Origin: Penicillus capitatus
Taxonomy: Eukaryota > Plantae > Chlorophyta
Length of the DNA: 64,000 nt
Direction: 5' to 3'
NCBI GenBank assembly: GCA_965649825.1
Contig: OZ287713.1
Coordinates: 341,587-405,586 of the forward strand
A program made the translations under genes and the position numbers. A model generated the notes under the pieces. That model was not told the origin of the DNA and did not search any database. It worked only from the letters and a program-made list of their open reading frames with translations. Positions 19,694-62,200 of this stretch are shown here, in pieces (positions within the stretch are counted from its first letter, which is position 1; every line of letters starts with the position of its first letter).

Positions 19694-20498
19694 TCCCCAC
19701 CCATTCTTTCTCTTTCCATGCATCTTGATGCTGCCTCAGTCGATTGGGTGGGATTGTTATTGATTGATTGATTGTTTCATTGGTCGGTCGAAGAAGAAGA
19801 GGATGAAGAAGAAGAAGTGGCATAGCACAGTTTTCCTTTGGGACCGGGACGACTTCAAATAGCGTGACATCACATAAGCTCTTGGGTCTTTTAGTTTTCA
19901 GCCGATACTGTCAAGAAGATGGATGCAGATTTCTCAAGTATAAAAAACGCACCTGTGTACAGAATCTCTGTATTTTCTTGACTGAGGAGAGATGGACATG
20001 TCGATTCTTTTCTCGGTACGTACGTACGTCGTTTCAAAATCCCAGTTAGCAAGCGTCCGTATGCAGATTAGCTTGCCCATACATACCCATGTTATTTATT
20101 TTTTCTAAGGGAGATGATCCAAAAGATGTGTGTGTCTCTACTGGGGGGACCTGGACTGCACATTCGCTGTCATCCTGGAATTTTGAGAAGCCTTGTGATG
20201 GCAATGCTTTTCCTCAAGCTTTGATGAACATCACCTGCACCGCCGCCGCCGCCGCCGCAATCTGATACCGATGAATAAAGAACCAAAGGAGACAATTGAT
20301 CAAAAAACATACAAACTACGAAGAGAAACAGTTGACATCGATGATCGATCGTTAAGAAACGGATAGACAAGAACTCCACGCATAAAGGCTGCGCGATAAA
20401 ACGCATGCAGACCAAGCGTGGTACCGTGGACATGCACATAATGTAATAGTCGGTCTTTGCCCTTACGATGGACAGACGTCCCATCATCCATCAGCCTT

Positions 20499-21701
20499 TC
20501 AGGCCTCTTTACCGTCGGCTTGACGAAGGGTGCCCAGTTCCCTGGGAGCACTCGTCTGCACGACCATGCTCTTAGCAAGAGCTGTCACATCACCCGTCGC
20601 CGCCAGATCCTTGGCGACCTGTTTCTTGATCCAGTCGTACGTCAATTTCAGTCCATCCTTCAGAGAGACCGTTGGCTCCCAGCCCAGCTTCTCCAGAATG
20701 AGCGAGTTTTCAGAATTCCGTCCTCGGACGCCTTCTGGTCCAGGAATGTGTTTGATCGGCAATGTCTTGCCTTCAAAGCCCATCACCATCTCCATCATCT
20801 CGTTCATGCTCACCATCTCGGTGGTGCCCAGATTCAACGGCTCTCTGAAATCCGATTTCGTGATCCGAATGATCCCCTCGACGCAATCGTCGATAAACGT
20901 AAAGCTCCTTGTCTGTTTGCCATCGCCCCACATCTCGATCTCTTCTGTGCTCGTCAGCACTTTGCGACAGAATGCTGCCGGGGCTTTCTCTCGACCGCCT
21001 TTCCACGTTCCGTGTGGACCATAGATATTATGAAAGCGTGCCACACGGCATTCGATACCAAAATCCATATTGTAGTACTTGCACACCTCCTCCCCTGACA
21101 GCTTCTCCAGTCCATAAGCATCTTGTGGCTGAGCCGGCCAGGCATCGGACTCCTTCAACCCGCCACCTTCAACCGTCGTCTCCATCTGCTTCGTCTCCGG
21201 ATAGCAGCAAGCACTGCCTGCATAGAAATACCTAGACAGGCAACGACATCATGATCCATGTGATGTGACTGTTGGCTGTAGAGACAAATACCTTGAGACA
21301 CCACACTGACGAGCGGCCTCGAGGACGTTAAAGGTAATCATGGTATTGTTGTAGAAGATGACAGAGTGATTGGACTGGATGAAGCCCATGCCACCCATAT
21401 CGGCTGCTAGGTTAAACACATGCTGACACCCCGTGCAGACTGTCTTGCAGTTTTCAAAGACGCGCAGATCCACCAGATGAAATTCATCACAGAATTCGGC
21501 CTCTTCAAAGTGCTCGTTGCGTTTCCAGTCACAGCCAACGATGTAGTGCCCCTCAGACTTGAGGCGTTTGGCCAAGTGCGAGGCAATGAAACCACCGGCG
21601 CCGGTGATGCAGATGCGCAGTTTTTCGGCCGGCCAGTACGGTTCGAAAGGATACGTGGCGAGATCGGAGACCGCATGGTACTCCTTGGCGACGGCAGACA
21701 T
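20499..21701 (-). CDS. GME: GDP-mannose 3',5'-epimerase; 1 intron
   Basis: RICITGAGGFIASHL, FNLAADMGGMGFIQSNHSVI, AWPAQPQDAYGLEKL, GPHGTWKGGREKAPAAFCRK, GPEGVRGRNS, ending ADGKEA*. Confidence 0.97.
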
Positions 21702-21773
21702 AGGGACTGTGATAAGGCGTTTGGCGAATGGGGTTGGTGCGTTCGGGTGCTGCGCGTGACAAAGACCTGACAA

Positions 21774-24640
21774 ATGATGCGTCAACGACACCAAGCGGCT
21801 CGCCGCGTCGTTTCGCCGGACAAACCGCCGTCTGTTGCCAAACCCTCGACGCCGCCGACCAAAGGGCCCTTCTGGATCACATGGGGGCTCTTTACAGCGG
21901 CAATGGTACATATGCGTTCTGTCGGCGATGGGTGAGGCGCGTTGAAGGTGGCTGTGATATGGTACTGGATCTATTGGACCCCACCACCGCTCACTCGTGA
22001 CGCACCGATGGATGTCTTCTCCGAGCAACGCGCGTTGGAACACGTTCGGGTCTTGAGCGACGAGATCGGACACCGTCAGGTCTACTGATCACGCGGCATT
22101 ATGGTGTTTGACTGTGTGGCAGGTCTCGACGCAAGGTCTGCGAGAAGCTGCTGAGTATCTGCTACGTGAGTGTCAATCTCTGGTCGACTTGGCACATAGA
22201 CGTCCGGACTTGGAAGCGACGGTCTGCTCCCATATGGCGTCGGATGGTGATCGAGATGGCGTGAGATGTAGGTGGATGTGGAGCGAGTGTCCGGTGCAAT
22301 CGTGGACAAAATCTTTAAGAAGCATCTGATCAATGTCTACCGTCATCTGACGAATGTGGTGCTCTTCGTGGGACCCAAAGAGGCAAGCAACAGATCAGCT
22401 GTTCTGATCAATGCACACTACGATAGCGCCTTGGGTTCTCCTGGAGCAGCCGATTGCGCATCCTGTGTGGGCGTGGGACTTGAAGTTGTACGGACATTGA
22501 TTGAACGTAAAGAGCCGTTGTCGCGTCCAATTGTGTTGCTCCTGAATGGAGGCGAAGAGACACTGTTACAGGCAGAGAGGTATAGGATCCAGAGATGATG
22601 TGACAGCTATGGTGTCTGCTAGGCAGCGCATGGGTTCGTAACGCAGAGTGCCTGGCGCGATCGTATCGGAAGCTTTATCAACGTGGAATCGACGGGATCT
22701 GGCGGCGGGCCAATGCTCTTTCAGTTCACAGGCAGTTGGACACTGCGAGCCTACGCCTCGAGCGTTCCTTTTCCCAGAGGCGTCGTCTTGGCACAGGAGT
22801 TCTTTGAGTCGAGGATCATTCCGGCGGACACCGATTTTCGTATGCTCTCTTCGGCGCATCACGGTGCGTATCCCGGTGTCGATATCGCTACGATTTTGGA
22901 CGCGACGGCTTATCACACCGATCGAGACACCTTCTCGCGCCTCAAGACGGGACCCACACAAGTGCCCATTCCTCATGCGGATGCATTCTCCCAAGACATG
23001 TATGCGATTAGGAGTTTGGCAATGCGATTGTGGCATTGACATTGAAGATGATGGAGATGCTTGAGATGCATGACAGTGACAGCTCCGATGCGAAATGGGT
23101 CTTTGCCGATGCCAGTCATTTCGTAATGGTGCTCTATTCCATTCAAACAGCCAAGTGGATTCATGGTCTGCCATTCCTCCTGATCTCAATTGCCTTTTTG
23201 CTGGCATCGAAGAAAATGCGTTTCTTAGTGACAGCCGTCGTCAGTGTCTTGCAGCATATGCTGTCACTCATACTGGCTCTCGCTCTTCCGGTGCTCTCCG
23301 GAGCGACACGTGTGCTTCTCTCAGGTACAATGGCTGTCGATGCAAAACCTCTCTGCAAAACCGCATTCTAGGTCGACCCGTGACATGGTTTTCGCATCAT
23401 CTGGCGGCTTTTGCCTTTTACTGGCCCATATCTGCGGCTGGATTCATGATCCCTCACGGCCAAGATGGACACCCAGAACACGTCGCCTCGCGATTTGCTG
23501 GGGTCAGTCTGATGACAGGGACACTGGCCTGGACACTCACCTTTGCGAACATCGGCTCATCCATCATTCCCTTCGCTGTATCCCTCAGCACCTCCATTGC
23601 CTGTCTCGCCATCGTCTGCCGTCAGAAACTGGACATGACCATGCTCTTGACACTGCTCTCTGGATGCATCTCTTTCTCTGCTTCACTGCTCTTGGTGTTG
23701 ATCCGACATATCATGGAGAAGATCAGCATTGCTGGTGGTCGGCGATCCGCTTTGGGCTTTCTGATTCCGGATAGCGTCATCGGTGGGTTAAACGGTTTTC
23801 TCGTCTTCTTTGTCCTACTTCCTCTTTCTCCTTTGCTTACCACTCGATGGCAGTCACATTCCAAGAGTCGGCTGATCAAAGGTCTGTTGGCTGGAGGACT
23901 GGTGGCGGGTATCGCCTCCAGCTTTCTCTTTCCGTATTCTCTGCAGCATCCCAAGAGAATCTTCCTGAACCATCTGTGCCGACAGCAGTCAGACGGAAGC
24001 TGCATTTCTGTATGGTCCGTTGCTGCGTGGGATGTGACATCTCTCGACATAACGTTGCCCGATTCTCTCAAGGCCCAGACTCCAATCGCCACAGATCCAC
24101 TCGATTGGACAAGCGTCACGCCATTCAATCGCCTTGTCGCCGATATGGCCTTCAAAGGTCCACCATTTCCAGAAGAGGGTCCCTGGGGTACCTACCATCC
24201 CCGTCTGGAGCTCATCCAGCAGTGGCATAACGCTGAGGAAGGCAGCAGGACATTGGAATTTGCGTTAAAATGGGAGAAGCCAGGATGGGGAGCGATGAAC
24301 ATCACCGGTCCAATTCGCAACTGGTCACTTGCTGATCCCAGCGGCATTCAGGTCCTATCCCTGTTTTCTGATCCACGACAACATCGTATGCATCTGTTCG
24401 ATGCAGGCGGAGCAAAACACCATTCGTTTCGCCCAAGATGCCGACGATCCGATATGGTCTTTCTGGATAGAGGCGGAGACGAAGGAGGCGCTGGTTTTGG
24501 AGATTGGTGTGTACTATCCCACGCCATCGGTACAGGTGACCTCTCTGGCCAAGCAGTTCCCTCCGTGGACGACTGTGGTCAGCGGAACATCTTTTGTCAC
24601 TCGCTTTTCTTTTCCTCCTCTATCTGCAACGCACATGTAA
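21774..24640 (+). CDS. M28 family ER membrane metallopeptidase (ERMP1/Fxna-like); ~7 introns
   Basis: FSEQRALEHV..L..EIGHR, LINAHYDS..GSPGAADCASCV, LLNGGEE, INVESTGSGG, IPADTDFR, YHTDRD, followed by multiple TM segments. Confidence 0.92.
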
Positions 24641-24703
24641 CGACTCGATGGTCCTTCTGTGAATAGACACACCATCGCATTGACTTCACGATAACTAGAA
24701 AGA

Positions 24704-25152
24704 CTATTCCGACTTTAACGATCTACTGAAATCGAACAAATCAGCATCGTGACCCATCGCCAGGGGGAAGCCACGCACTGAGCAATTGGAGGTTGAAACG
24801 CAGTTGAGCAGGACTTGTGGTGAGAGGGCTCGATCGGGATGCGACCCTGGATTCGAGATTTTTAGTCGGTCCGACAGAGCGACGACCGTCGACAGCGCCC
24901 AGCTCGCTCGACAATAGCTGCCGCCAAATGGCATTCCTCATGACCGTGATGCCGATGATGGCCTTACCTTGGGGCATGCTCATTCTGCACACGCGTCAAG
25001 AAACTCTCTCCGGCGACATCTCCCCAGAACCAGGCCTCGGGGAGGGCCGCTTCCGCGGCATCTGACGATGGGTGCTCAACGGCCGCCCGCGCCAGGGACA
25101 GCGAGAAGAGGACAACGAGGCAACAGCCGAACCTGGAATCCGCGAGCATCAT
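24704..25152 (-). pseudogene. Truncated cathepsin Z-like paralog (signal peptide plus the first third of an inactive papain domain)
   Basis: MMLADSRFGCCLVVLFSLSLARA, LPEAWFWGDVAGESFLTRVQNEHAP|SYCRASWALSTVVALSDRLKI..LSPQVLLNC, then terminates against the 3' end of the M28 gene. Confidence 0.7.
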
Positions 25153-46516: not shown

Positions 46517-49003
46517 TCAGATAACGAAACTGGAAGATTCGCTTCTATCGCGACTTCTGAACTCTTTCTTGATTCTAGCTATTCCTGAGATACCATTCTG
46601 CAGATAGAGGTGATGGTACTTCGGCGGCTCTGGTACAGCGGCGTAGCAATCTGTCGTGATTCCCATATCGCCCTTGCCCATTGCTACTCTAAACCACCCC
46701 ATCTCTCCCCAGTAGGTCCCCCAGCTGTTTCTGCCGATCCAGAATCTAACACCGTTCTCTTCTCCCCACCCGGACAGCACGACATGCTTCTTCGAGACTG
46801 TTCTGCACGGGTAGGCCTTCTCGTCTGAAAAAATGCCGCCCGTGTAAGAAAGAAAAGATTCTGAGTCACAGACACGGCAGGCAACTGGTCCCCTGGCGAC
46901 GATCTCTTTCAACACATGTTCATCTCCGGACACCTGAGCAGCAGACACAGATACGGCCTGCCGTCTTCGCTCCGTGTGCTTACCCTGTAGTAATCTTTGA
47001 TGGTGTAGGGTGTGTATTCTCCAGGTTTCAGAGCGTAACAATTATCCGGCCAGCAGGATTTACACACGTGTATGTCGGTACATTCGTTGGACTTCGCCTC
47101 GTAAGGCGAGCAAGATTCATCCGGCAGGCTGCGATCCTTGATGTACTTGTAGGCATCGTGCACCTCGCCGCCGCGACATCCGTCGGTGTCTTTTGTTCCT
47201 ACACAATTAAGTAGAACCTAGGAAACAGTATTCGCCTCGAGTGACAAGACAGCAGCGATGGGCACTTGGGCAGAGAGAACGACTTCTGGGTACGAGGCGT
47301 TTTTCAGCAACGCAAATCTATCGTTAAGAGCAGATGTAGCAGCCTGAGCCCATGAGGACTCGCAGTAGTAAGGGTTGTTCTGGTTTCTGTTGATGGAAGC
47401 ATAACTCATCCCGAAGTGTGACCGAATGTCATATCCGACGGTCTCGTCTTGCCTAGAGTGAGTGGGTCTCTTGGTCGCTTTCTTCTTTGGTTTCTTGGCA
47501 AGGAGGCGTCTGGCAGGGCCATCGGCATTCTCTGAGATGTGTTTGTATGGATTGTGATAGTTCAGCAAAAACTCTCCGTACGGTACGTCTCTGCACACAG
47601 TACTGAGGATCAGGGGATGGAAAGGAGAGCGATGCGCACTCGGGGAGAGGATCGTCCGGCAGTAGATGCTTCGGAACCTTGGGTGTTGCCCACGTGCAAT
47701 CGTTCTCGATTCCGAGATTCATTCGAGCATCGCCCCGTATTATTCTGAAGAAACCATTCTCCCCCCAGTAGGTTCCCCAGCTGTTTCGACCGATCCAGTA
47801 TCTAGGCGCCAGAAACGCAACACTCATCGGGCATCCTTGCAGAAGGAGGGACTGCTTACGGGATGCCATTCTCCTCTCCCCATCCCACGAGGCTGACAAT
47901 GTGGTTAGCATTCCACCGTATCCCGTTTTCAGAATAGATGCCGCCAGTGTACTCGTCGAAGTTATCGGTGGCAAACAGCGTGCACGAAACCGGTCCATGC
48001 TTGTAGATCTCATTCATGATGTTGTCTTCCTTGCTGCTGAAGGCATGGTACATTCGAATCGCGCCGGCATCCGTCGAGTCGAAGGCAGAGATCTTGTAGA
48101 GGGTAAAGTCCTTCACTGCCTTGCACTCGTCGCGACTGTTGGCCTGCAAACGTCCCGTTATTGCAGCTGTCGCGATGGCGGCCTCCTTACATGGTTCCGG
48201 TTGCAGCTGACGCAGACACTCGTCTCTGCACATCGCTGGTTTAGCGCTCGATAGTTTTGACACGTTTCATCTGGCAATCCGTGCTCTGCTACATACCGGT
48301 AGACACCGCTGGCCTGTCCTCCCTACGGCGGCGCCGTTTTCCTTTCAGCGACGCGAGGCTAAATGGCTCACTTGGCATGTCCCTCCGCCGTTGCAGTTAA
48401 TCAGGACTTGAGGGGCCAAGATGATCTCTGGAAACTGGTTACGCCTCATGATCTTCATGCGGTCGGAGATGGCGGAAGTTGTCCCGAAGGCCCAACAACT
48501 TCCACAGTACCTGCATACACACGGCGTCCACTCGTTGCGTTCAGTCGACGAGACGCACTGTGGTATGTGCTGATTCCTCGACACCGTCAAGTAGTTGACC
48601 CCATGGATATCCCCCCAAAAGAAATACGGCGGAAGGCTGCTGGGTTCCCGGACCACGCGAGGCGTCGCCGTCGACCAGTGATTGGCTGCAGAACAGACAC
48701 TCGTTTCCTTCTCGCCGGCACAGCACAGTACCGCCTCCGATGCGTGCAGCCGTGGAATAGATCGATGGCTTGTTGGCGCACAAGCCTCCAGCCAAGACGC
48801 TTCCACCTTCATACTGCGAACGAAATGACGAACCCTAAAACGATTAAACGTACTCTTGGAACGACGCATTCGCCAGCATCGATGTCGTCGTTCAGAGAAT
48901 CTCCCGCAAAGGCATTCCCCGGCGGGGTCGAATCGGCAGCGTCGACCCAGCTTGAAAGAAAAAAGAAGACGAGGAAACAGAGCAGAACGAATATGGACTT
49001 CAT
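46517..49003 (-). CDS. CTSZ: Double-domain cathepsin Z/X-like papain protease A (active domain 1 plus inactive domain 2); multi-intron
   Basis: Signal peptide MKSIFVLLCFLVFFFLSSWVDA. Domain 1: RNQHIPQ|YCGSCWAF, ANHIVSLVGWG, GRNSWG. Domain 2: RNQNNPYYCESSWAQ, KKHVVLSGWG, GRNSWG. Confidence 0.92.
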
Positions 49004-49280
49004 GGGGGATGCGTACGTGGAAACAATAATCACTGGAACTGTGAGCGGATTCCAGCGTCCACCTTGGCAGCATTTACGAAGTGACGTCATCCACCTGCCA
49101 CGTTCGACGGCGCGCATCCGAAGCCGCTGGCTGATTGGAAACCGTGTGACGGCCGGAAAAAGGATCGAGGCTTTCAAAGAACACGGACATGTCTGGCCAC
49201 TAGACACAAAACCCATACACCGACCAGAGGAGAGATTCCTGCCCGATGTGGGCATCTGATAAGCTCCGGCTGGGAGGCGA

Positions 49281-49820
49281 TCATCTCTTGCGGGATTTCA
49301 CATTGGCAGAGTAGTCCGTCGATTTGTACACCTCCTCGTATCCGATGCCGTTGGCGGCGGAGTCCTTGAGCCAGGTCAGATACATAAAGTCTTCGAAATC
49401 TGAATCCAATCTGGATGCTGCCACGTAGAGTGCCGCACATCCACCGAGTGTCAATGGTAGCGACAGGAGGCCGACGTCGATGTTCAGACCGCCTCCCATC
49501 GATGAACTGGATGCCACAGGCGGCGCTGCTTTCACGACAGGGGCCGGAGCCTTATCTGTCTCTGTCGACGTGTCGATGCGTTTGAGCTGCGGCTGCTCCA
49601 AGACGACACCCGCTTCGACTGGTGCGGCCGCGAGCACTGCAGCCATGGCCACGCCGGCGAGGAAGGGCAACGGCTTGACGTGGACCGCCTCGTCTTGCCG
49701 TTCGACTCGGGAGATCGACGCCTGTGCGCGGAGGACTCTACGACTGCTGACCGGTGGGGCTCTGTCCCTCTTCGATAGGCCACACTTCGCGAGACGACAG
49801 CCCAGAGTTGACGAAGCCAT
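49281..49820 (-). CDS. Small thylakoid membrane protein with a bipartite (lumen-transfer) presequence; family unnamed
   Basis: Transit peptide, hydrophobic LAGVAMAAVLAAAPVEA (A-x-A cleavage site), GVVLEQPQLK, one TM (LLSLPLTLGGCAALYVAA), then LDSDFEDF..KDS..GIGYE. Confidence 0.75.
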   Translation of the reverse strand: MASSTLGCRLAKCGLSKRDRAPPVSSRRVLRAQASISRVERQDEAVHVKPLPFLAGVAMAAVLAAAPVEAGVVLEQPQLKRIDTSTETDKAPAPVVKAAPPVASSSSMGGGLNIDVGLLSLPLTLGGCAALYVAASRLDSDFEDFMYLTWLKDSAANGIGYEEVYKSTDYSANVKSRKR

Positions 49821-50194
49821 TAGACGCGTCGAAGGGATCTTCTCTCAGAACGCGTTTGTGCGTTCGCGAGCGTTCGTCTGTCCGTCCACTCATCGCCAGT
49901 CGCTGTCATCTTCAATTCGAACGATGACGATTTACAGGGTAGTCGGCGTCCGTCACCTCTGGGGGTACAAAGGTAACCAAGTACGCCCAACACAGCAGCA
50001 CATCGCGAAAACTCATTGTAATGATTGTCGGTCAACGTCAGGAGAGTACACTACCCTCATAATCCTAGATTCTGTTGGGCGTCACATATTTTGATGATCG
50101 ATGTCACGTCAGACCACGACGGATGCGTTTATACACACGCCTGTCTATTCACACTCGCAGCCCATCCGGTCGATGCAGACGCACCAGCATCCCG

Positions 50195-50548
50195 TTAACT
50201 AGCGCCGCCAGCCGTAGAGAGTGTCCCCGATGGAGATGATGAAGAAGGACTCGACTGCTCTGCTTCTTCGCGAGATGCCTCGTGCGTTTGTTCCACCTCT
50301 CCATCGGAAGCAATGACCGGCCTATCTAAAGCACTAGCCCCTAGAACAGAACCACAGTTACTTAGCGATACTGGTTCTGGAGAGAGGCTCCACAGACCTC
50401 CGAGTCGCGGTGTCTCGATGTTCTCCGCATAGACAGTCCGTACAACAGGAAAGCCCAATTCGACGTCCGGCTCAGGTCGTATCCTGAACTCAGCTGATGC
50501 CATCCATGCCTTGATCTTTTCGGAAGGTGTTCGTTGTCTCTTCATCAT
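50195..50548 (-). CDS. Hypothetical protein (may have upstream exons to ~50860)
   Basis: 117-codon ATG ORF with no recognised motif. Confidence 0.3.
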   Translation of the reverse strand: MMKRQRTPSEKIKAWMASAEFRIRPEPDVELGFPVVRTVYAENIETPRLGGLWSLSPEPVSLSNCGSVLGASALDRPVIASDGEVEQTHEASREEAEQSSPSSSSPSGTLSTAGGAS

Positions 50549-50997
50549 TACGACCTCGTTCTAATGACACACGGACGTGCTGTCATCGCATGTCTGGCTG
50601 ACGATGGCGTCACACCTTTAATTTATGCTTCGCTGGATGCTTCTTCTTCTTGGGGTAACAAAACCAAAGATACGCGAGGATTAGGAGATAAAGACATAAC
50701 TGAGCTAAAATCGAGGCCAGGACAACGAAGCCAGACGCCATCCATAAAGAACCGGCGAAACACGTTTTTCACGAGGAGTCTACAGAAACCGTCTCGAATG
50801 CGCCTATCGGAGAATGGCGTAGTTAGGTGCTGACTTACGTGTCCCTCCGCCTTACGAGACATGCAGCTTCACACGATGCTCCACGTTCACACAGGCGTCT
50901 GTGAGACACGATTCGTATTCGGCCGACGCGTCGTACCCATCGCCGTATGAGATGTCCCGTACCTGTATCAGCCGTCGGCGATGTGATTCGCCAAAAG

Positions 50998-51486
50998 ATG
51001 TCGGTCAGTTTGCACACGAGCCTGGGCGATATCAAGATCGAGATCTTCTGCGAGGAGACGCCGCTCGCGGCAGAAAACTTCCTTGCGCTATGTGCCAGTG
51101 GATACTACGACGGGACGCTGTTTCATCGCAACATCAAAGGCTTCATGATACAGGGTGGAGACCCCAGTGGCACGGGGAAGGGAGGACGGAGCATCTTTCA
51201 CACGCTGAACCACAAATTCGAGGACGAGATCCGACCGGAGCTCAAGCATAACAAAAGAGGGATCGTCTCGATGGCGAACAGCGGACCCAACACGAACGGA
51301 AGCCAGTTCTTCATCGCTTACAAGGCGCACGTCCATTTGGACGGAAAACACACAGTCTTTGGTCATGTGATCGACGGCTTCGATGTTTTGGACAAAATGG
51401 AGAAGGTTCCAGTGGAGGACGGCGAGCGACCGAAACAGGACATCAAGTTGCACGGGACGACGATCCACGCCAATCCCATTGCGTAG
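50998..51486 (+). CDS. PPIL3: Cyclophilin-type peptidyl-prolyl isomerase, PPIL3/CYP18-like; intronless
   Basis: MSVSLHTSLGDIKIEIFCE, ENFLALCASGYYDGTLFHRNIKGFMIQGGDP, SMANSGPNTNGSQFFI, HANPIA*. Confidence 0.96.
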   Translation: MSVSLHTSLGDIKIEIFCEETPLAAENFLALCASGYYDGTLFHRNIKGFMIQGGDPSGTGKGGRSIFHTLNHKFEDEIRPELKHNKRGIVSMANSGPNTNGSQFFIAYKAHVHLDGKHTVFGHVIDGFDVLDKMEKVPVEDGERPKQDIKLHGTTIHANPIA

Positions 51487-51498
51487 GACATCCCGCCA

Positions 51499-54400
51499 TC
51501 AGGGCTCGTAGTTAAGCATGCTACGAAGATGCGCCTCGGCCTCTTTCTTGTCGATCCCCTTGCGATCCGCGTAGTCGTGCGCCTGCTCCTCCGTGATCTT
51601 TCCCACCGCGAAGTACTGACTCTGTGGAGCGCCGAAGTAGAGACCGCTCACACTGGCCGCCGGCAACATCGCCAGCGTCTCGGTGAGGCTGACGCCGATG
51701 CTCTCTTCTGCCTTGAGGATCTCCCACATCGTGAGCTTCTCGCTGTGATCCGGCTGAGAGGGGTACCCCGGAGCCGGGCGGATGCCCTGGTACTTGACCT
51801 TGAGCAGCTCCTCCGTTGACATGGTGCCCTCGGAGGAGTACCCCCAGTAGTCCTTGCGCGTCATCTCGTGGAGCTTCTCGGCGAAGGCTTCGGCCAGACG
51901 ATCCGCCAATGCCTCGGCCATGATGTAGTTGTAGTCGTCGTGGGCGGCCTTGTAGCGCTCCACCACAGTCTCCAGCCCAACGCCGGCCGTGTTGACGAAC
52001 ATGCCGATGTAGTCCGGCACGCCGCTGTCCTTCGGGGCAATGAAGTCTGAGAGGCAGAAATAGGCGGTGGCTCCATCGCGTTCCGCCTGCTGTCTCAGTC
52101 CATGGAACGTCGCCTTGATCTGCTGACGGTCATCGTCTTCGTAGACCTCGATGTCGTCCCCCACCGCATTGGCCGGAAAGAAACCGATCATGCCGTTCAG
52201 GGTGACCGTTTTCTGCTCGACGAATTCCCTGAGCATCTCCTGCGCCTCGTCGAAGAGCTTTTTGGCCTCAGCGCCGACGGCGGGATCGTTAAAGATCTTT
52301 GGGTAGCCGCGATTGGGATACCTCCCTCTCAGCTGCCACACCTGGAAGAAGGGATTCCAGTCGATGTAGGACAGCACGTCCGATATGGCAAAGCCGTTGA
52401 AGACGTGGATGCCCAGACGCTTCGGTCTCACCGGCTGCGACTCCGGCAGCGACCAGTCGATCGCAAACTTCTTGGCGCGGGCCTGCGCGAGGGTGAGGTA
52501 CCTGCGGTCCTCCAGGCCAGCATAGAACTCTTCACGGATCTCATCGTACTCCTCTCGGATGACTTCCACGAACTCCTCCCTCTGCGTCAAGTCCATCAGC
52601 GTCTGGCAGACGGGGACGCTTCGGCTGGCGTCCAGGACGTGGATGACGGCGGATCCCGTGTACTGTGGAGCGATCTTGACGGCCGTGTGGACCTTGGACG
52701 TCGTGGCGCCTCCGATGAGTAGTGGCAGTCGGAGGCCTCTCTCTTCCATCCGCTTCGCCACTGTCACCATCTCGTCGAGCGACGGCGTGATCAGGCCACT
52801 AAGGCCGACGATGTCCGCTTTCTCCGTCTCGGCGGCGTCCAGGATCTTCTCCCACGGCGTCATCACTCCCAGGTCAACGACTCTGAAGTTGTTACATCCC
52901 AGCACGACGGCCACGATGTTCTTGCCGATGTCGTGAACGTCTCCCTTTACTGTAGCGATCACGATGGTACCGGCGTTGCTGGGGCCCGAATCCTCTTCGC
53001 CCTTCGCCGCCTTCGCCTCCTCGATGAACGGCACAAGGTGCGCCACCGCCTTCTTCATGACCCGCGCCGACTTGATCACCTGCGGCAAAAACATCTCACC
53101 CGCTCCGAACTTGTCTCCCACGATATTCATCCCGTCCATCAGCGGCTGCTCGATCACGTTGAGTGGCTCCGGATACTTTCCGCAAGTCCGCGCCTCCTCT
53201 GTGTCCTTGACGACGTAGGTGTCAATGCCCTTGATCAGGGAATACGCCAGTCGCTTCTCGACCGGCTCCTCCCTCCACGCCTCCGACTTGGACGCCGATC
53301 TGTCGGCCTCCTGTGCCGTGCCGAGCGGCAGAACTTTCGTTGGCTTGGACTTGGGATTAATTGTCGCGGCGTACTCCAGAATCCGCTCCGTCGAGTCCTC
53401 CCGTCTGTTGAGCAGCACGTCCTCGACGTACTCCAGCAGCGTCTTATCAATCTTGTGGTAGTCGTCCTCCTTGACTTGGGCAGCGTTCACGATACCCATG
53501 TCCATCCCCGCAGCACAGGCATGGTGCAGAAAGGCGCTGTGAAAAGCTCGACGGACAGGCTCGTTACCGCGAAAAGAGAAGGCCACATTCGACACGCCGC
53601 CGCTGATCTTGCATCCAGGACACACGCGCTTGATTTCCCGAGTGGCCTGGATGAAGTCCACGGCGTAGTTGTTGTGCTCCGCCATCCCTGTTCCGATCGT
53701 CAGGATGTTGGGATCGAAGACGATGTCTTGAGGGTCGAATCCCACGTCCTCTACCAGGATGCGATAGGCGCGCTGGCAGATGCGGACCTTGTCTTCGAAC
53801 GTCGCCGCCTGGCCGTGCTCGTCGAACGCCATGACCACGACGGCGGCGCCGTGTCGGCGGATCGTCGCCGCCTGACTTCTGAAGATCTCCTCTCCCTCCT
53901 TGAGAGAGATCGAGTTGATGATGCACTTCCCCTGGCAACACTTGAGTCCGGCCTCGACGATGTGAAATTTTGAAGAATCGATCATGAAGGGCACGCGGCT
54001 GGTCTCGGGGTCGCTGACGAGGAGGTTGACAAACCTCACCATGGCCGGGACGCCGTCGATCAGACCGTCGTCCATATTGATGTCCAGCAGATCGGCGCCC
54101 TGTTGCACCTGTTTAAGGGCGATGGCCTGCGCCTTGTCGTAGTCCCCGTTTACGATCGCCTTCTTGTACATCATCGATCCGGCGACGTTGCAGCGCTCAC
54201 CCACGCAGAGAAACGTCCGACGCATGTTGCCTTCGTCTGGCTGGTAGTTCAGCGGCTCCAATCCGCAGAGGCGCATGAGAGGAGGGATGTCGTGATTGGC
54301 TCTCGGCGGAAATTCCGACGCCATCTCGGCGATGGCCGTGATGTACGGTGGCGTGGTGCCGCAGCATCCACCCACCGCATTCAACAACCCCTCCTCACAG

Positions 54401-55350
54401 AAAGGTCTCAGCAAGTCAGCCATCTCGTGCGGCTTCTGATCGTAGCTCCCCATCGCATTCGGCAGTCCGGCATTGGGGTAGCAGAAAATGTAGCAGTCAG
54501 CTAATTGGTGCAACTTCTCTATGTACTGCTTCATGTCTTCGGCCCCGAGGGCACAGTTCAGACCAATGGCGAACGGTTTGGAGTGGCGCACGCTGTTCCA
54601 GAACGCCTCGTTGGTCTGGCCGCTCAGCGTCCTCCCCGAAAGATCGACAATTGTTCCGCTGATCATGACCGGCACGCGAAGCTTGCGCTCTTCGAATAGT
54701 AGATCCAGAGCGTAGAGTGCTGCCTTGGAGTTGAGCGTGTCGAAGATCGTTTCGACCAGGAACAGATCGACGCCGCCGTCCAGCAGCGCCTCCGCCTGCT
54801 CGTAGTAGGCGTCCACCACTTCGTCGTAGGTGATTCCCCGAAAGGCCGGATTCTCGACAGACGGCGAAACGGACAGTGTTTTGTTGGTGGGACCGATGGC
54901 ACCGGCGACGAATTTCGCGGTGCCTGGATGGGCGGCCTCATACTCCTTACATGCCTTCTTGGCCAGCTCTGCTGCGGCGACGTTGATGCGAAAGACCTCT
55001 TCCCTCTCATCGAGGTGGTAGTCGGCTTGAGAGATCCGAGTGCCGTTGAAGGTGTTGGTCTCCAGGATGTCTGCCCCAGCCTCGAGGTAGGCGGTGTGGA
55101 TATCTCCAATTATGTCCGGACGGGTGACGACGAGAACGTCGTTGTTGCCCTTGAGGTCGTGCGGGTGGTCGCGGTAAACGTCGCCGCGGAAATCGATCTC
55201 TTCGAGACGATAGGTCTGGATGCAACTGCCCATCGCTCCGTCGATAATGGCAATCCGTTCTTGAAACAGCTTCTCGAGCGCGGCGAAGGCATCGGACTTT
55301 GGAAGCGGGTCGACGTAAGGTCTGTAAGAAGGCGGCTCGCCGGAGGCCAT
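51499..55350 (-). CDS. METH: Cobalamin-dependent methionine synthase; intronless (possible in-frame extension to 55500)
   Basis: [35 protein letters not shown] (Zn), [20 protein letters not shown] (B12-binding), [23 protein letters not shown] (AdoMet domain). Confidence 0.98.
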
Positions 55351-55380
55351 CGTCTCAGTCGTGTAAATGATTGGGACGTT

Positions 55381-55506
55381 CGGCTGATCGATGGATGATG
55401 ATCGACGCATCGACTGATCGATGGATGATGATCGACGCATCGGCTGATCGATGGATGATGATCGACGCATCGGCTGATCGATGGATGATGATCGACGCAT
55501 CGGCTG
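55381..55506. repeat. 30-bp tandem repeat, 4 copies plus a partial copy, at the 5' end of METH
   Basis: CGGCTGATCGATGGATGATGATCGACGCAT x4 (one G>A variant). On the minus strand it reads [10 protein letters not shown] x4, in frame with METH. Confidence 0.97.
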
Positions 55507-55879
55507 TTGCAATCAAGAATGCGGTGAGAGGAACTAAGGCATTGGTTGGGGGAAGGAGACAGAACGCTTTAGTGGACAGCACAGCTTTCCTCTCTGCGGA
55601 ATGGATCTTCTGTCGCCGGAGTCTCTGTGTATGAGCGCCGGATGTGGCTCGTGCAATTCCTGACGGATGATGACGATGGCGCTACGACATCAGCTGCTAC
55701 CAACAATCGATGCGTGCGTCATCGTCATGTGGTCGCTCCTCGAAAAGCATTCCTGCAGCGAAACGATAGAGATGTTTGTCCAACTGGATGACAGGAGTCG
55801 AGGTTAAAGTGGCAGCTCGCAGCCGAGTACGGCGTGTCATTTCCTGGGTTGGATGGGAAGGTTTTTCCGTGTCGCCGCG

Positions 55880-57745
55880 CGATTCAGATGACGACGCCGA
55901 AGGGGTGCGGGGTCGCGGAGAGGCGATTCTGCGAAACGAACCGACTGTCTCTTGAACTCTTTCTGAAACGCGCAAGCCAATCGCCTTCACATTCTGGTAC
56001 ATACATACATACCATTGCGAAGATGGCTTCGTGAAATTGTTCTCCTTTTTGTTGATAGATCGGCAACAGAAACCCTTTCCGAACACCGTTTTCCAGAAAA
56101 CGAGAGTAGAGTTTGTTCAAGTGAGAAGACGAACAGCGATATTGGCTTCTCTCATCAACTTCATCTGGGTCTACAGTTTGGGTCACATATTACACATTTA
56201 GGCGCAACAGTTTCTCCAAAAGCACCGGAAGGGACAGCTTACGACCGAGTTCAAATCGAACAAGACAATAGGGTTTACCATAACGAATCGCTCGAAACTT
56301 GTCTTCCAGTGTATGTCAGTTCTCGGAGAGATGCTGTTTTGTGACAGGCACCATCGTATGTCAAATCGATCCTCGAGGAAATGGTGACAGCGTGAGCCAT
56401 TCCGCTGTCATGTCGAAAGACTGGAAAAGTCAGTCGATCGTTAGCAGTGCACAAGTAAGCAGGAGTCTGACATCTAAACACATACACGTTCTACACAAGT
56501 CTAAGATGCAGTGTCTTTTTTCCTAGAAGTAAGCACCGTTTCGCATAAATCTGTGTGTCTGAATTTGCATTGTGAGCACAGAATGCGCAACACGGAGCCA
56601 AACAAGATGTCTAAGAGGAAGAATAGCAAACAGAATCAATCCTGCACTTATGCAACTAAGACGCAAGCGTCTTTCTTGACGCCACTCATTGAAGATACAG
56701 AGGCCGATGGATCTATACACCCAAACGCACTAGAGACAGCACACAACACAGCAACTGTCCGCTGCTTCATGCCTCTGGTTTACGAACGAGGGCCGATCGA
56801 AGTTTTCTCAAGAATCTGCAGACAGTGTTCTTCGTCTCACGAAGAAGACGTGCTGCACGACGTATGGCCGTGCGTGCCGATTGTGGCAGACGAACCCAGA
56901 CATATAGACCACGTCCTTCCTGTGAACAGTCGATGTCACAATGACCCTCGCTCAGGATAAGGCTTGATGCATCCTTCTGTGAAGCCTCACCTCTCTCGTC
57001 ATTGCCATAATACTCTTCTGCCTTTCCTTCGCAAAAGAGAACAGTCGCAAGAAGTATTCTGTGCGCTTCATTGAGAAAAGTGGACGACGTGCTCAGGCCG
57101 CGCGTCAAAAGTAAGTAACGAGGAATTCGGAATATTCTGCTGACAGAGGTAGCCGCAAGAATATTCTCTTATCAGATTGGACAAAGACGTGAAGGGTCGG
57201 AAGCTGTCGTGAACATATGACAATGACGCTCAGGCAATGGAATGCCAAACTGCCGTAGCTTCCTCATCATTGCAAGCACAAGTGCTATCAATTTTATTCA
57301 ACTGCATTGCCGTCAAGCTACGCAGACGTTGAACCAAGGCCGATACGTTGTTAATCTTCTTCCATTTCGCGTCCATACGCAACTTGGACGCAATTCAAAA
57401 CGCGTTTGTAGATTTATAAACATAGAACCGTCGAATCGTCGCTGTACACGCCTGTCGACACTTTCGTCATCGCCGGAAACTGTCTCGAACGTCTTGCCTT
57501 TGTCGTGGAATCTCGATCCCTTCTTTCAGATCTTAATATCGCATCGTCGCGACACGACTTTTATATTTATCAATCTTATCAAAACGTGCCGTTGCGACCA
57601 CAGCTGTCCGACAGACGGCTGTCGAACAGAATCGCATAGCTGGCTTTCTATCAAATTGATGTATACAGTTTGCAGATGGCCTGACAAGATTGTCAGTATG
57701 GCGCAAGCGAAGAAGCTGCTTATGACAAAAACGCTCAGAGCACCG
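55880..57745 (-). pseudogene. SOS1: SOS1/NHX7 (SLC9C-like) Na+/H+ antiporter relic with stops and frameshifts
   Basis: Colinear motifs: TM FFACAILTILSG; EEYYGNDERGEASQKDASSLILS (cf. YWEMLDEGRIS..TANILMQS); ERRLRLSCISAG (cf. ERLESACYISAAFLRAH); HFLED..P..WKT; FLENGVRKGFL..EQFHEAI (cf. IENLEKVGLLEEKEIAHLHDAV). SOS1 motifs are recalled from memory. Confidence 0.55.
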
Positions 57746-58535
57746 ACGTGATATAAAGATATCGCGCCGCCGTTCTAACTTTGGCGCCATATTGGCCTCA
57801 ATCGTCCTGGCTTTGCGCACTCATTCGAAACTGGATGATAGAATTCAGGTGGAGCGCAACGAGACCGTGGTCGCGTTAAGCATCGAGAGAACGAATCTTA
57901 GAGTCAGATCGGTGCCGAGCGGTGTTCGCGATGCCTACTACTTAGAAGATCCTCTAAGGTTCACACGCTGAATGACGCGCTGTAAAAGAGTTATTTCGTC
58001 GAACGCATCCACGTTCTGCATCGCTCCGTAAAAAGATAGACGCAAGATAGAGTGCTGACGCGTGAACAGACAACGGCTGCCGAAAAGTGCTACGGAACCG
58101 TGACACTAAGAAGTATTTGATGGATCGCGTGAAGCTAAGGTTTCTGTCGGTAGTGGTGGATAGTGAGACCGGGGAGCGGATGAAAGACGAGCGTCTCCAG
58201 TCTGCTTTGCAGTTCGTTTATTGATACGTTCGATCAGAGAGACAGCAAGGCAGATCATGCAATGAACATGATGTGACGCTTACTGCGTCTATTAGGTGCC
58301 GCCTTTAGCATACGCAGTCTAGATCGGTAAAGCCTTTGCGACGAATTCCTAACAGCAATCGACGACATATTTGATAAAAGTGGCTACTTACTGTCTGGCG
58401 TCTTTTCATGAAGAAATCATGAAATAGAATCCTGACTAAGTAGATTCTAGCAGATGAAAGCAAATCTATTCAAACACATAGTGCGTTGATCGTAATTTTT
58501 CAGACAATCAATCATAATGCTAACAATGGCCGCAC

Positions 58536-60968
58536 TCATGCACTGTACGCTGAACGAATTCTGTTTGGCAGTTGACGTTGTTGAGACAAATGAAGAAAGA
58601 CATCTCTGAGACCAGCGGCTTTGGTCTTTTGATGCCCTCCCGAGAAGAGATACTTGTAAGCGGGTTGCTCCGGTGTCGCCCAGTAGCATTCTCTTGTGAC
58701 GCCCAGGTCTCCGTCGCCCATGGCTAGATGAAACCATCCACGGATCCCCCAGTAGGTGCCCCAGCTGTTGCGTCCGATCCAAAACTTTTCGCCATTTCGC
58801 TCGTCCCATCCAGAGAGGACAACGAATTGGCTGGAAGAACTGCCACTCTTACAGGCGCCAGGATCACTGAAGATGCCACTCTGGTAGGAATGGAATGCCC
58901 TGGATTCGCAAATGCGGCAGGCAACGGGACCATTCTGCGCAATCTCCTGCATCACAGCCCGATCTCCAGAGATCTGTAGAACCGCCACGTAAACCTCAGC
59001 AGTAGACGAGATCAAGGATTATTACCTTTCCATGCGATGAAATGCTGTATGGTGTGTATTCTCCTGCTTTCATGGAGTAACATCCCGATGGCCAACAATT
59101 CTTGCAGATGTGAATGGCATCACATTTGAGGGGCTTTCCTTCATACGGTGCGCAGGACTCGTCTGGAATGGTGTGCTTCTTAATGTACTCATAGGCATCA
59201 CTCGGATCTTTGCCGTCACACTTTCCATTCGATGATGCACAGTTTAGCAGGACCTAAATGCAGAAGCACTCAGTCGAGACAAGATGTGTGAGATGAGATG
59301 CACTTGGACGGAGAGAACGACTTCTGGATAGGTCAATCCTTTGAGCAGGGTGAAACGATCGTTCAGAGCGGAGGTCGCTGCCTGGGCCCAGGAAGACTCA
59401 CAAAACACTGGGCTGTGTTGATTGCGATCGATTGAAGCGAAACTGATGCCATTGATATCACGAATGTCATACTTTACTGGAATGTCTGTAACCTTCACCG
59501 TTTTCCCGTGCTGCCCTGAAGATGAACTCTCTTTCTGCTCTTCGGCATGATACTTTAGAAGATACTCTCCCCACGGCACATCCCTAGATGTCAGAGTGTT
59601 CGCTGACGGTTTTGTAGGGAGAGAGCGACATTGGTAGGGGGTCGCTGGGCTGGAGTTCATCTGGGATGACAGGCGTTGCGAAGGTGCAGCCGTTTTCGAC
59701 GCCCAGACCGAGGAAGAAACTCGGTCGGGCGATTCGGAAATACCCGTTCTCTCCCCAATATGTGCCCCAACTATTCCGTCCAATCCAATACCTGCAAACG
59801 TCACATCATCTTAGATCTCGCTGGCACAGAGGAGTCTCTCACTCGAAGCCATTCTCCTCTCCCCATCCGACGAGACTCACGATGTGATTGGCCGAAGCCC
59901 AAACGCCAAACTAGGCAAGAATATAGCTCAAATCGAAATGAGATGGTGATGTGACGGCTTCGCACCTGACGAAAGACTCCTCCTGTGTATTTGTCGAACT
60001 TCTTTGTAGCGAAGATTTCGCACGCCACAGGGCCGCGAGAGTAGATCTCTGCCATGATCTTCTGAGTGTGAGACACTCCCCTGTTGTGACCGTCATAATC
60101 TCCTCCGGCAGTCGCATAACCAAAGTCTTCGATGAAGTAACGGCGGTACTGATCCACTGTAGAGCACGTGTTGTGCTGTCCCAACTTCTCACACTTCTCA
60201 CACACTCCATGCGGTTCGCATCTGTTATTCCTTGCTTGATAATTCTGACAGGTCTCATCAGGCAGACCGTGCTTTGCAATATAGTAATAGACACCGCCAG
60301 CGGTACCGCCCTTTGCAGGAATAAGATCAGAAGACATCGAGGAGATGAAGGAGAGCACTTGGCAGGTTCCGCCTCCACGGCAATTGATGAGAACCTGTGG
60401 TGCAAGGTTGACCTCGGGGAAGGCGTTGCGACGCTCAATCTTCATTCTGTCAGAAATGGCAGAGGTGGTGCCGAACGCCCAGCAACTGCCACAGTATCTG
60501 CGCCACCCAAATGCATTCAATCTCTTCTCAGATGTGATTACTGTGGAATGTGCTGGTTGCGTGAGACAGTCAGATAGTTGACGCCGTTGATGTCTCCCCA
60601 GAAGAATTCCTTTGGCAGTGTGGCGACGTCCATGATCTCATGGCCGCGTCGTCTTCGAGAATTGACTCTTTCGACTGCAGACAGCCAGCAGCACACACGA
60701 TGAGAAGCTGATGGGATGCTGGCGTACCTCGGTCGTAGATGCCGTTGGTGCAGAGCCCTCCGGCGAAGACACTCGTGTCCGGTGTCTAGGAACGGCAGTG
60801 GTTGGGTTGCGTGCCGCTTCGCGACGGCGTTACCTTGGGAGGCAGGATACACTCGCCGCCCTCCAGGGTCGTATCGAGTTCCTCCAGGGACGCATTCGCT
60901 CCATCATGTTCGGCCAGGCAGCTGCCGACGAGCAACGCCGTCACAGCACAGACAATACTGCGTCGCAT
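58536..60968 (-). CDS. CTSZ: Double-domain cathepsin Z/X-like papain protease B (active domain 1 plus inactive domain 2); multi-intron
   Basis: Signal peptide MRRSIVCAVTALLVGSCLA. Domain 1: RNQHIPQ|YCGSCWAF, ANHIVSLVGWG. Domain 2: RNQHSPVFCESSWAQ, SSQFVVLSGWD, GRNSWG. Confidence 0.92.
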
Positions 60969-61079
60969 GTTTAGTCAGACGAGGTGCAAAGAAATGAGGT
61001 AATGGATGGAATCCGTGACGCGGCGGTCGCTTTCGATGTGCAAATGATCGTCATCCAGAACATAACTCTGTCGGCTTTT

Positions 61080-62200
<1,121 letters not shown>

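What the first reader, a model, noticed from the sequence alone, without database searches (positions are those of the whole stretch)
46517..60968. Cathepsin-Z family fusing an active protease to a conserved, catalytically dead second domain (two paralogs)
Seen: two separate genes (46517-49003 and 58536-60968) each encode a signal peptide, a shared pro-region motif (EC..P..SV.AGGLC.N), a normal cathepsin Z domain (CGSCW, NHIV, RNSWG) and a second papain domain. In both paralogs the second domain has the catalytic Cys replaced by Ser (CESSWAQ) and the catalytic His position holds Lys (A) or Gln (B), yet it is full-length, stop-free and keeps its other Cys residues. Established: papain-family catalysis needs Cys25 and His159, and dead papain homologs such as SERA Ser-type domains act in binding or regulation. 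Inference: the pseudo-domain predates the duplication and is maintained by selection, e.g. as a built-in substrate receptor, inhibitor decoy or wall/wound-plug adhesion module of a secreted protease.
Basis: partly seen in the sequence, partly recalled or inferred. Interest (0 to 1): 0.72.

Follow-up and report, generated by a model that had tools for sequence, protein, structure and literature searches.

The report
Tandem cathepsin X with dead domain
Two green-alga genes each encode a secreted or vacuolar cathepsin X protease joined to a second cathepsin X copy that lost its catalytic residues yet is still conserved: a new, lineage-specific example of a known kind of "pseudo-enzyme", not a new kind of system.

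Summary
Gene A (49003..46517, - strand, 683 aa) and gene B (60968..58536, - strand, 661 aa) each have 10 exons. Each encodes a signal peptide, a short Cys-containing pro-region, an intact cathepsin X domain (D1), a fast-evolving linker, a second cathepsin X domain (D2) and a conserved C-terminal tail. In D2 the catalytic Cys is Ser (CESSW). The His position holds Lys in A and Gln in B.

D2 is not decaying. dN/dS against a sister-strain locus is 0.06-0.08, the same as D1, and it models confidently as a cathepsin X fold.

The interpretation needs correcting. The two-domain architecture is old, widespread and already noted in a 2024 preprint, and in most relatives both domains are intact. D2 was inactivated once, in a small clade. 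That happened before the A/B duplication, and an active D1 was kept wherever D1 could be read. Similar losses recur elsewhere in this family: at least 17 of 71 diverse two-domain representatives have one.

The most likely role of D2 is a non-catalytic partner or binding module of D1. Nothing supports a wall or wound-plug role. I rate it a new variant of a known kind, of modest interest.

The parts
46517..49003 (-). Gene A, full CDS with stop codon. 10 exons (49003-48854, 48813-48732, 48685-48559, 48510-48372, 48322-48191, 48143-47860, 47801-47640, 47590-47266, 47217-46984, 46933-46517); 683 aa.
   Evidence: Gene model. Intron boundaries conserved in L001. Two Peptidase_C1 stretches.
48938..49003 (-). 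Gene A signal peptide, residues 1-22 (MKSIFVLLCFLVFFFLSSWVDA).
   Evidence: Hydrophobic N-terminus, mean Kyte-Doolittle 2.5; coordinates. Read from the sequence; no predictor was run.
48636..48937 (-). Gene A pro-region, residues 23-94. Holds the shared motif ECVVPRYEGGSVLAGGLCAN (48871-48772, interrupted by intron 1).
   Evidence: Low pLDDT in the model.
47672..48635 (-). Gene A domain 1, residues 95-348: intact cathepsin X domain. Cys125 is codon 48497-48495 and His291 is codon 47903-47901. Also has the Gln, the Asn and the HIP mini-loop.
   Evidence: 223 bits against human cathepsin X 1EF7; catalytic tetrad Q,C,H,N; omega 0.06.
47434..47671 (-). Gene A linker, residues 349-411. The first part is conserved (PLPEDVPYGEFLLNYH) and is followed by a basic, low-complexity stretch (KKPKKKATKRPTHSR).
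   Evidence: Omega 0.26. pLDDT about 90 for roughly residues 350-380 in the full-length model, but below 50 when modelled without D1.
46622..47433 (-). Gene A domain 2, residues 412-649: catalytically dead cathepsin X-fold domain. Ser438 (codon 47355-47353) replaces the catalytic Cys and Lys594 (codon 46789-46787) sits at the His position. Gly23 (papain numbering) is Glu.
   Evidence: alignments; pLDDT above 90; TM 0.88 to 1EF7; omega 0.06-0.08.
46520..46621 (-). Gene A C-terminal tail, residues 650-683 (KYHHLYLQNGISGIARIKKEF...SSSFVI). Conserved in P0001 and in L001/L003.
   Evidence: Alignment; omega 0.09; predicted helix.
58536..60968 (-). Gene B, full CDS with stop codon. 10 exons (60968-60834, 60785-60728, 60674-60542, 60497-60359, 60310-59966, 59910-59843, 59791-59630, 59583-59304, 59253-59026, 58973-58536); 661 aa.
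   Evidence: Gene model. Two Peptidase_C1 stretches. 7 of 9 introns are at the same column and phase as in A.
59662..60618 (-). Gene B domain 1, residues 84-336: intact cathepsin X domain. Cys114 is codon 60484-60482 and His279 is codon 59886-59884.
58662..59471 (-). Gene B domain 2, residues 385-620: dead domain. Ser411 (codon 59393-59391) replaces the Cys and Gln565 (codon 58829-58827) sits at the His position.
   Evidence: dN to A-D2 is 0.30-0.34, against 0.33-0.38 for D1, with dS saturated.
58539..58661 (-). Gene B C-terminal tail, residues 621-661 (AYKYLFSGGHQKTKAAGLRDVF...). Shared with the B-type sequence P0074.

Best explanation
Genes A and B are paralogous members of the ancient double cathepsin X family: one polypeptide with a human-like (CPX-III-like) domain followed by a second (CPX-I-like) domain. 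After the signal peptide is removed and the short Cys-containing pro-region is released, D1 should act as a normal cathepsin X-type cysteine carboxypeptidase.

In the common ancestor of a small clade, apparently of green algae, D2 lost the Cys/His pair. Cys became Ser and the neighbouring Gly became Glu, and both changes then became fixed. The His position became free to vary. D2 nevertheless kept its fold, its disulfide cysteines, the oxyanion Gln, the Asn and the Trp residues.

D2 is therefore a pseudoprotease domain. It most likely persists because D1 needs it as a non-catalytic partner: for folding, stability or regulation in an intramolecular pseudo-dimer, or to hold substrates. This would resemble the dead second domains of other tandem enzymes.

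Shown here: the anatomy, the loss of catalytic residues, the single origin before the A/B duplication, strong purifying selection, and a retained fold in the model. Inferred: D1 activity, the partner or binding role of D2, and the lysosome/vacuole or secreted location.
For: - Gene models and conserved splice sites.
- Two Peptidase_C1 domains in each protein.
- D1 has the full Q/C/H/N tetrad and scores 223 bits against human cathepsin X.
- D2 has Ser at the Cys position and Lys or Gln at the His position in both the HMM and the 1EF7 alignments.
- The residue at the His position varies across the CESSW clade (K, R, Q, G, A, S, H), while CESSW itself never varies.
- Omega for D2 is 0.064-0.080, against 0.059-0.061 for D1 and 0.26 for the linker, at dS 0.36-0.51. 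Introns are only 81% identical, exons 85-94%.
- The CESSW D2 clade has 100% bootstrap, and A and B are never sisters.
- A more distant genomic contig (L005) has an intact D1 plus a CESSW D2.
- An intron-free contig reads through both domains.
- AF2 full-length model: pLDDT 83, pTM 0.85. D2 alone has pLDDT above 90 over most of its length and TM 0.88 to 1EF7.
- The first part of the linker is ordered only when D1 is present, which fits a defined D1-D2 arrangement.
- The tandem architecture is documented in bioRxiv 10.1101/2024.05.15.594278, Table S4.
Against: - No biochemical data exist for any member, and no expression data exist for the window's own genes.
- I could not read model coordinates, so the D1-D2 interface and the state of the D2 cleft are unknown. 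pTM is only indirect evidence of a fixed arrangement.
- The low-complexity, basic part of the linker could be a cleavage site that frees D2 to act on its own.
- The invariant Glu and Ser in the former active site could mean a new chemical role rather than a purely structural one.
- The CPX-I/CPX-III assignment was not tested against the preprint's reference sequences.
- The sister strain shows no B orthologue in the 10 kb fetched upstream of MetH, where B lies in the window, so B's selection could not be measured at low divergence.
Confidence: 0.55

Rival explanations
1. D2 is cut away from D1 at the basic, disordered linker and works alone as a binding module: a substrate receptor, an inhibitor decoy that soaks up cystatin-like inhibitors, or an adhesion protein.
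For: The second half of the linker is low-complexity, Lys/Arg-rich, fast-evolving (omega 0.26) and has low pLDDT. The cleft scaffold residues Gln, Asn and Trp are kept. Dead papain homologues with binding or regulatory roles are known, for example SERA5 (PMC4671257, PMC5500368).
Against: The Gly-Gly motif that holds substrate or inhibitor backbones is not conserved in D2 (CRGG in A, CDGK in B). D1 and D2 stay fused wherever both could be read: the window, L001, L003, L002 and L005. Nothing links the proteins to walls or wounds.
Confidence: 0.2
2. D2 is still an enzyme with new chemistry: Ser438 acts as the nucleophile, helped by the invariant Glu two residues before it (or by Lys594 in A). This would parallel silicatein, a Cys-to-Ser cathepsin L with a new activity.
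For: E and S in CESSW do not vary in any clade member, and Glu at this position recurs in other dead domains of the family (CEASW, CEAGW). The oxyanion Gln and the Asn are kept.
Against: The general-base position is not conserved (K, R, Q, G, A, S, H). The Gly-Gly substrate-binding motif varies. The cathepsin X HIP loop is changed to NNP or HSP. Cys-to-Ser papain mutants are essentially inactive (established knowledge).
Confidence: 0.1
3. D2 is a decaying relic with no function that has simply not yet been lost.
For: Catalytic residues are gone, and the His position drifts.
Against: Omega is 0.06-0.08, equal to the active domain, while introns and synonymous sites have diverged. D2 is retained stop-free in two old paralogues and in several further environmental sequences of unknown origin. 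The fold is modelled with confidence.
Confidence: 0.03
4. Gene-model artefact: D1 and D2 are two adjacent genes, not one protein.
For: No RNA data exist for the window itself.
Against: The reading frame is continuous across a conserved GT..AG intron. D2 has no start codon or signal peptide of its own. The intron-free contig L002 reads D1-linker-D2 as one ORF. 116 of 122 proteins in the comparison set (120 hits plus A and B) have two domains.
Confidence: 0.02

Closest known systems
Double cathepsin X (CPX) domain proteins of protists and algae (bioRxiv 10.1101/2024.05.15.594278, Table S4: Chloropicon, Micromonas, Klebsormidium, Chara, Guillardia, Monosiga and others)
   Same: One polypeptide with two cathepsin X domains. 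In non-SAR lineages the human-like (CPX-III) domain comes first. Here too D1 is the more human-like domain (223 against 163 bits to 1EF7). The host is a green alga.
   Different: The preprint says nothing about inactive domains. Among my close relatives the second domain is intact in 106 of 116. Here it has lost Cys and His, and the clade also has a new linker motif and a C-terminal tail.
Human cathepsin X/Z (PDB 1EF7, 1DEU)
   Same: Best sequence and structure match for both domains. Both keep the three-residue insertion before the catalytic Cys. D1 keeps HIP, the catalytic tetrad and a short pro-region with Cys.
   Different: Human cathepsin X has a single domain. D2 lacks the Cys/His pair and the HIP histidine (in A). 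D1 has an extra insertion of about 11 residues.
Plasmodium SERA5 and other Ser-type papain pseudoproteases (PMC4671257, PMC5500368)
   Same: Papain fold with Ser in place of the catalytic Cys. Conserved and functional without proteolysis.
   Different: SERA Ser-type domains keep the His, are single-domain and are unrelated to cathepsin X. Here the His is also lost, and the dead domain is fused to an active twin.
Tandem enzymes with an active first and a dead second domain, such as receptor tyrosine phosphatases D1/D2 (10.1101/805119). From my own knowledge: carboxypeptidase D domain 3, JAK pseudokinase-kinase, trypanosome 'prozymes'.
   Same: A duplicated catalytic domain in one chain or complex, with one copy inactivated but conserved and serving regulation, stability or binding.
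   Different: Different folds and chemistries. The analogy is functional only and was not tested here.

Membership tests
Papain family, Peptidase_C1 (PF00112) | Significant match to the family profile | tested here: met
   Two stretches in each protein; whole-protein scores 289 and 272 bits against a cut-off of 20.7.
Papain family, active peptidase | Catalytic Gln-Cys-His-Asn at the canonical columns | tested here: met
   This row is for D1 of A and B: Q,C,H,N all present.
Papain family, active peptidase | Catalytic Cys and His present in D2 | tested here: not met
   D2 of A has Q,S,K,N and D2 of B has Q,S,Q,N. The alignment to 1EF7 places human His180 opposite the second Lys of SKKHVV.
Cathepsin X/Z subfamily | Closest solved relative is cathepsin X, with the insertion carrying the HIP mini-loop before the catalytic Cys | tested here: met
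   1EF7/1DEU is the top hit by sequence and by fold. D1 has NQHIPQYCGSCW. D2 keeps the loop length, but it reads NNP in A and HSP in B.
Cathepsin X/Z subfamily | Short pro-region whose Cys is disulfide-linked to the active-site Cys | not testable with these tools
   The pro-regions are short (about 65-70 aa) and hold two Cys. The covalent link cannot be inferred.
Cathepsin X/Z subfamily | Carboxymonopeptidase activity | not testable with these tools
   Needs an enzyme assay.
Double CPX-domain proteins (preprint Table S4) | Two cathepsin X domains in one polypeptide | tested here: met
   Read-through in the intron-free contig L002.
Double CPX-domain proteins (preprint Table S4) | One CPX-III and one CPX-I domain, with CPX-III first outside SAR | tested here: inconclusive
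   D1 is more human-like than D2 (223 against 163 bits). In my tree D1 groups with the first domains of some hits and the second domains of others, as expected if the order is swapped.
Pseudoenzyme (pseudoprotease) | Enzyme fold retained, catalytic residues missing, sequence under constraint | tested here: met
   Fold. Residues. Omega 0.06-0.08.
Pseudoenzyme (pseudoprotease) | Experimentally shown lack of catalysis | not testable with these tools
   Needs an activity-based probe or an assay.
SERA-type Ser papain homologues | Cys replaced by Ser with the catalytic His retained | tested here: not met
   His is replaced in A, B and most clade members. Only P0074 has His at that column.

The most novel reading that the evidence does not exclude
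Tandem cathepsin X proteins have repeatedly evolved into 'one live, one dead' pairs across eukaryotes: at least 17 of 71 diverse two-domain representatives, with either domain affected. In the most novel reading, the dead domain in this green-algal clade is an obligate intramolecular activator or substrate-capture partner of the live one (a built-in 'prozyme'). The fixed Glu/Ser pair would rebuild the old active site into a binding site.
Probability: 0.2. Interest if true: 0.55.

Novelty: new variant of a known kind. Interest (0 to 1): 0.33.

Why it matters
Cathepsin X has recently been tied to stress-induced cell death in a diatom and in Chlamydomonas (bioRxiv 10.1101/2024.05.15.594278). If the tandem form is the working unit in many algae, a clade in which one half is dead but strongly conserved offers a natural experiment on what the second domain contributes beyond catalysis. 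It also warns annotators that 'cathepsin X' or 'Peptidase_C1' calls in algal genomes include non-catalytic domains. Beyond that, the finding is an ordinary example of pseudoenzyme evolution.

Tried and rejected
- **A/B dN/dS.** Synonymous sites are saturated (dS undefined or above 10), so I used the sister-strain loci L001 and L003 instead.
- **Linker as a propeptide in the D2 cleft.** Not supported. The linker is ordered only when D1 is present.
- **Naming the organism.** Only the MetH search gave names: green algae at 68-73% identity. Cluster look-ups of clade members returned no names or accessions.
- **Profile search with the CESSW alignment**. It added only one new clade member (P0251) and oddly omitted P0001.
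- **Literature searches** for tandem or dead cathepsin X domains found nothing beyond the preprint.
- **B orthologue next to MetH in the sister strain.** Absent from the 10 kb fetched upstream, so B has no low-divergence selection estimate.
- **Rfam scan of the window.** No matches.
- **Regex classing of catalytic residues**. It leaves many domains 'unclear' or partial, so the 17 of 71 figure is a lower bound and approximate.

Full report
**What is there**

The window is eukaryotic DNA with very short introns. Gene A runs 49003..46517 and encodes 683 aa. Gene B runs 60968..58536 and encodes 661 aa.

The model for A holds up in a sister-strain locus. L001 comes from a 1.23 Mb contig of ENA assembly ERZ26696514 and is 87% identical in DNA. 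All nine GT..AG boundaries are kept there and exons 2-10 align without gaps. Exons are 85-94% identical, while introns are only 81%.

A and B share 7 of 9 intron positions at the same alignment column and phase. One further shared-phase intron sits in the poorly aligned pro-region. Each gene has one private intron position.

**Protein anatomy**

Pfam finds two Peptidase_C1 stretches in each protein. Reading from the N-terminus (coordinates):
- a hydrophobic signal-like N-terminus;
- a short pro-region with two Cys that carries the shared motif (A: ECVVPRYEGGSVLAGGLCAN; B: ECILPPKTPDTSVFAGGLCTN);
- D1, a normal cathepsin X domain with NQHIPQYCGSCW, NANHIVSLVGWG and RNSWG, scoring 223 bits against human cathepsin X 1EF7;
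- a linker with a conserved first part (PLPxDVPYGEFLLxYH) and a variable, low-complexity second part;
- D2;
- a conserved C-terminal tail.

D2 reads YCESSWAQ where D1 reads YCGSCWAF. In an HMM alignment of all domains, and in the alignment to 1EF7, the catalytic His column is Lys594 in A and Gln565 in B. The His in A's SKKHVV is one residue out of register. The oxyanion Gln, the Asn of RNSWG and the Trp residues are kept. D2 has 12 Cys against 11 in D1.

**Is D2 maintained?**

Between A and B, synonymous sites are saturated. dN is the same for D2 (0.30-0.34) and D1 (0.33-0.38).

The sister-strain loci L001 and L003 give usable divergence, with dS of 0.36-0.51. Omega there is 0.059-0.061 for D1, 0.064-0.080 for D2, 0.26 for the linker and 0.09 for the tail. 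So D2 is under purifying selection as strong as that on the active domain.

AlphaFold2 models the full protein with pLDDT 83 and pTM 0.85. D2 modelled without D1 has pLDDT above 90 over most of its length. Its best structural match is mature human cathepsin X, at TM 0.88 and 2.4 A. The first part of the linker is confidently modelled only when D1 is present. This argues against the linker filling the D2 cleft like a propeptide, and for it packing on D1 or on a D1-D2 interface. I could not read model coordinates, so this stays indirect.

**Where it comes from**

A search with A's D2 returned 467 relatives. In the comparison set of the 120 best hits plus A and B, 116 of 122 proteins have two domains. 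The catalytic tetrad is intact in D2 in 106 of those 116. In D1 it is intact wherever the whole domain is present, apart from a few cases. Named members include Blastocystis and Triparma.

A 2024 preprint on cathepsin X as an algal cell-death protease (bioRxiv 10.1101/2024.05.15.594278) already lists 'proteins with double CPX domains'. In SAR lineages a CPX-I domain comes first. In Chloropicon, Micromonas, Klebsormidium, Chara, Guillardia, Monosiga and others, CPX-III comes first. The preprint does not mention inactive domains. The swapped order explains why first and second domains intermingle in my domain tree.

The tandem architecture is therefore old and known. The fusion is not 'active plus dead' by origin.

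**The dead-D2 clade**

CESSW-type D2s occur in the following sequences:
- A and B;
- the near-identical sister-strain loci;
- P0001, which is A-type and shares A's tail;
- P0074, which is B-type and shares B's tail;
- P0041, P0060, P0251 and P0340;
- probably P0376, a short piece that shows the variable His column but not the CESSW motif.

These D2s form one clade with 100% bootstrap. A and B are never sisters, and B groups with P0074 in 70% of replicates. The inactivation therefore happened once, before the A/B duplication.

CESSW never varies within the clade, including the Gly-to-Glu change. The residue at the His column varies: K, R, Q, G, A, S or H.

A genomic contig from a more distant member (L005, Logan SRR2835676) shows an intact D1 (CGSCW, ANHIISLVGWG) ahead of a CESSW D2. 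L004 (JGI 3300001264) shows the end of D1, the conserved linker motif and a CESSW D2. P0001 lies on a 1939-nt contig without introns that reads D1-linker-D2 in one frame. This is best explained as an mRNA, so at least in an orthologue transcripts do not end before D2.

The closest outgroup, proteins such as P0014 and P0023, has the same domain order and an intact D2.

**How unusual is it?**

An exhaustive scan of 1.84 billion cluster representatives found 271 relatives at E below 1e-30. Half of the best 150 have two domains. At least 17 of 71 two-domain representatives have lost the Cys or the His in one domain, and either domain can be the one affected. At least 8 are 'intact first, dead second'. 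The classification is approximate and is a lower bound.

One-live-one-dead tandems thus recur in this family. The window's clade is one instance. I found no paper that describes this.

**Host**

The neighbouring intron-less methionine synthase (51499..55512, - strand) is 68-73% identical to green-algal proteins from Micractinium, Chlorella, Parachlorella, Volvox and a pedinophyte. It is 95% identical to the sister-strain protein. This supports a chlorophyte that is not close to any named genome in the collection. Cluster look-ups gave no names for clade members.

**Mechanism**

D1 should be a working cathepsin X-type carboxypeptidase. This is inferred from its full set of defining residues.

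D2 cannot use the papain mechanism. A Ser-based activity is unlikely, because the general-base position drifts and the Gly-Gly backbone-binding motif is not conserved (CRGG in A, CDGK in B).

The most economical reading rests on four points: strong constraint on D2, fusion retained wherever both domains could be read, a confident two-domain model, and a conserved D1-proximal linker. Together these suggest that D2 is a non-catalytic partner of D1 serving stability, regulation or substrate holding (confidence about 0.55).

A free-standing binding or decoy role after linker cleavage remains possible (0.2). New chemistry (0.1), a decaying relic (0.03) and a gene-model artefact (0.02) are unlikely.

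The tails end in hydrophobic residues (SFVI, QYVF, TSAF). From my own knowledge, these resemble plant C-terminal vacuolar sorting signals. That is a hint towards a vacuolar rather than a wall location, and it was not tested.

**Verdict**

This is a clade-specific pseudoprotease variant of a known tandem cathepsin X architecture. It is worth a note for protease and algal cell-death researchers, but it is not a new kind of system.

Noticed in passing
window 24707-25044, - strand: A third cathepsin X-like piece: LPEAWFWGDVAGESFLTRVQNEHAP, followed by SYCRASWALSTVVALSDRLKISNPGSHPDRALSPQVLLNC. Again Ser replaces the catalytic Cys. Only the first 70 or so of 238 profile positions are recognisable, so it is either a truncated relic or a very divergent gene. 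It lies just past the end of a 523-aa + strand ORF (23095-24666).
   Followed up: partly
protein hits P0310-P0452 (not in the window): Among diverse two-domain cathepsin X-like representatives, at least 17 of 71 have lost the catalytic Cys or His in one domain or both. Motifs include CASSW, CSSSW, CEASW, CGAGW and CKSSH. Glu at the Gly23 position recurs in dead domains.
   Followed up: partly
window 55380-55512, - strand: The ORF containing the methionine synthase starts with four tandem copies of a 10-residue unit ([10 protein letters not shown], one copy [10 protein letters not shown]), upstream of the conserved enzyme. The ORF as listed starts at TTG, so the true start codon is uncertain.
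   Followed up: no
L003 1-10000, compared with window 55512-62000: In the sister strain there is no gene B orthologue in the 10 kb fetched upstream of MetH. The neighbouring P-type ATPase gene is in the opposite orientation to its orientation in the window. L003 also carries inverted copies of XPD-like (DEAD_2/HBB) ORFs, at 1-1605 and at 19890-21142.
   Followed up: partly
window 46520-46621 and 58539-58661, - strand: Each paralogue has its own conserved C-terminal tail after D2. The A-type reads KYHxLYLxNxxSGIARIKKE and the B-type ..AxGLRDxF... Both are shared with sequences from other organisms (P0001, P0074) and absent from the intact-D2 relatives. Several tails end in hydrophobic residues, which may be a sorting signal.
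   Followed up: partly
window 48144-48190 (A) and 59911-59965 (B), - strand: Intron 5 sits at different places in A and B. The distant relative L005 has an interruption at the B-type position, so A probably lost that intron and gained or kept another.
   Followed up: partly
window 47980-48030 approx., - strand (A residues about 233-248): D1 of A, B and P0001 carries an insertion of about 11-13 residues (for example STDAGAIRMYHAF) relative to human cathepsin X and to other tandem proteins. It has low pLDDT in the model.
   Followed up: no
L004 (JGI 3300001264, record BBAY68_14666930): A CESSW-type member comes from this environmental contig. From memory, the BBAY sample names belong to seaweed-surface metagenomes, which would fit a green-seaweed origin for the clade. 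This was not verified.
   Followed up: no
window 2883-4562 (+), 15537-16439 (-), 21249-22073 (-), 50947-51486 (+): Other genes seen in the ORF lists, identified by eye and not tested: a PPR-repeat-like protein, a FAD4/TMEM189-type desaturase-like protein, a GDP-mannose 3,5-epimerase-like piece, and a cyclophilin (the syntenic ORF in L003 carries Pro_isomerase). The set fits a green-lineage nuclear genome.
   Followed up: no
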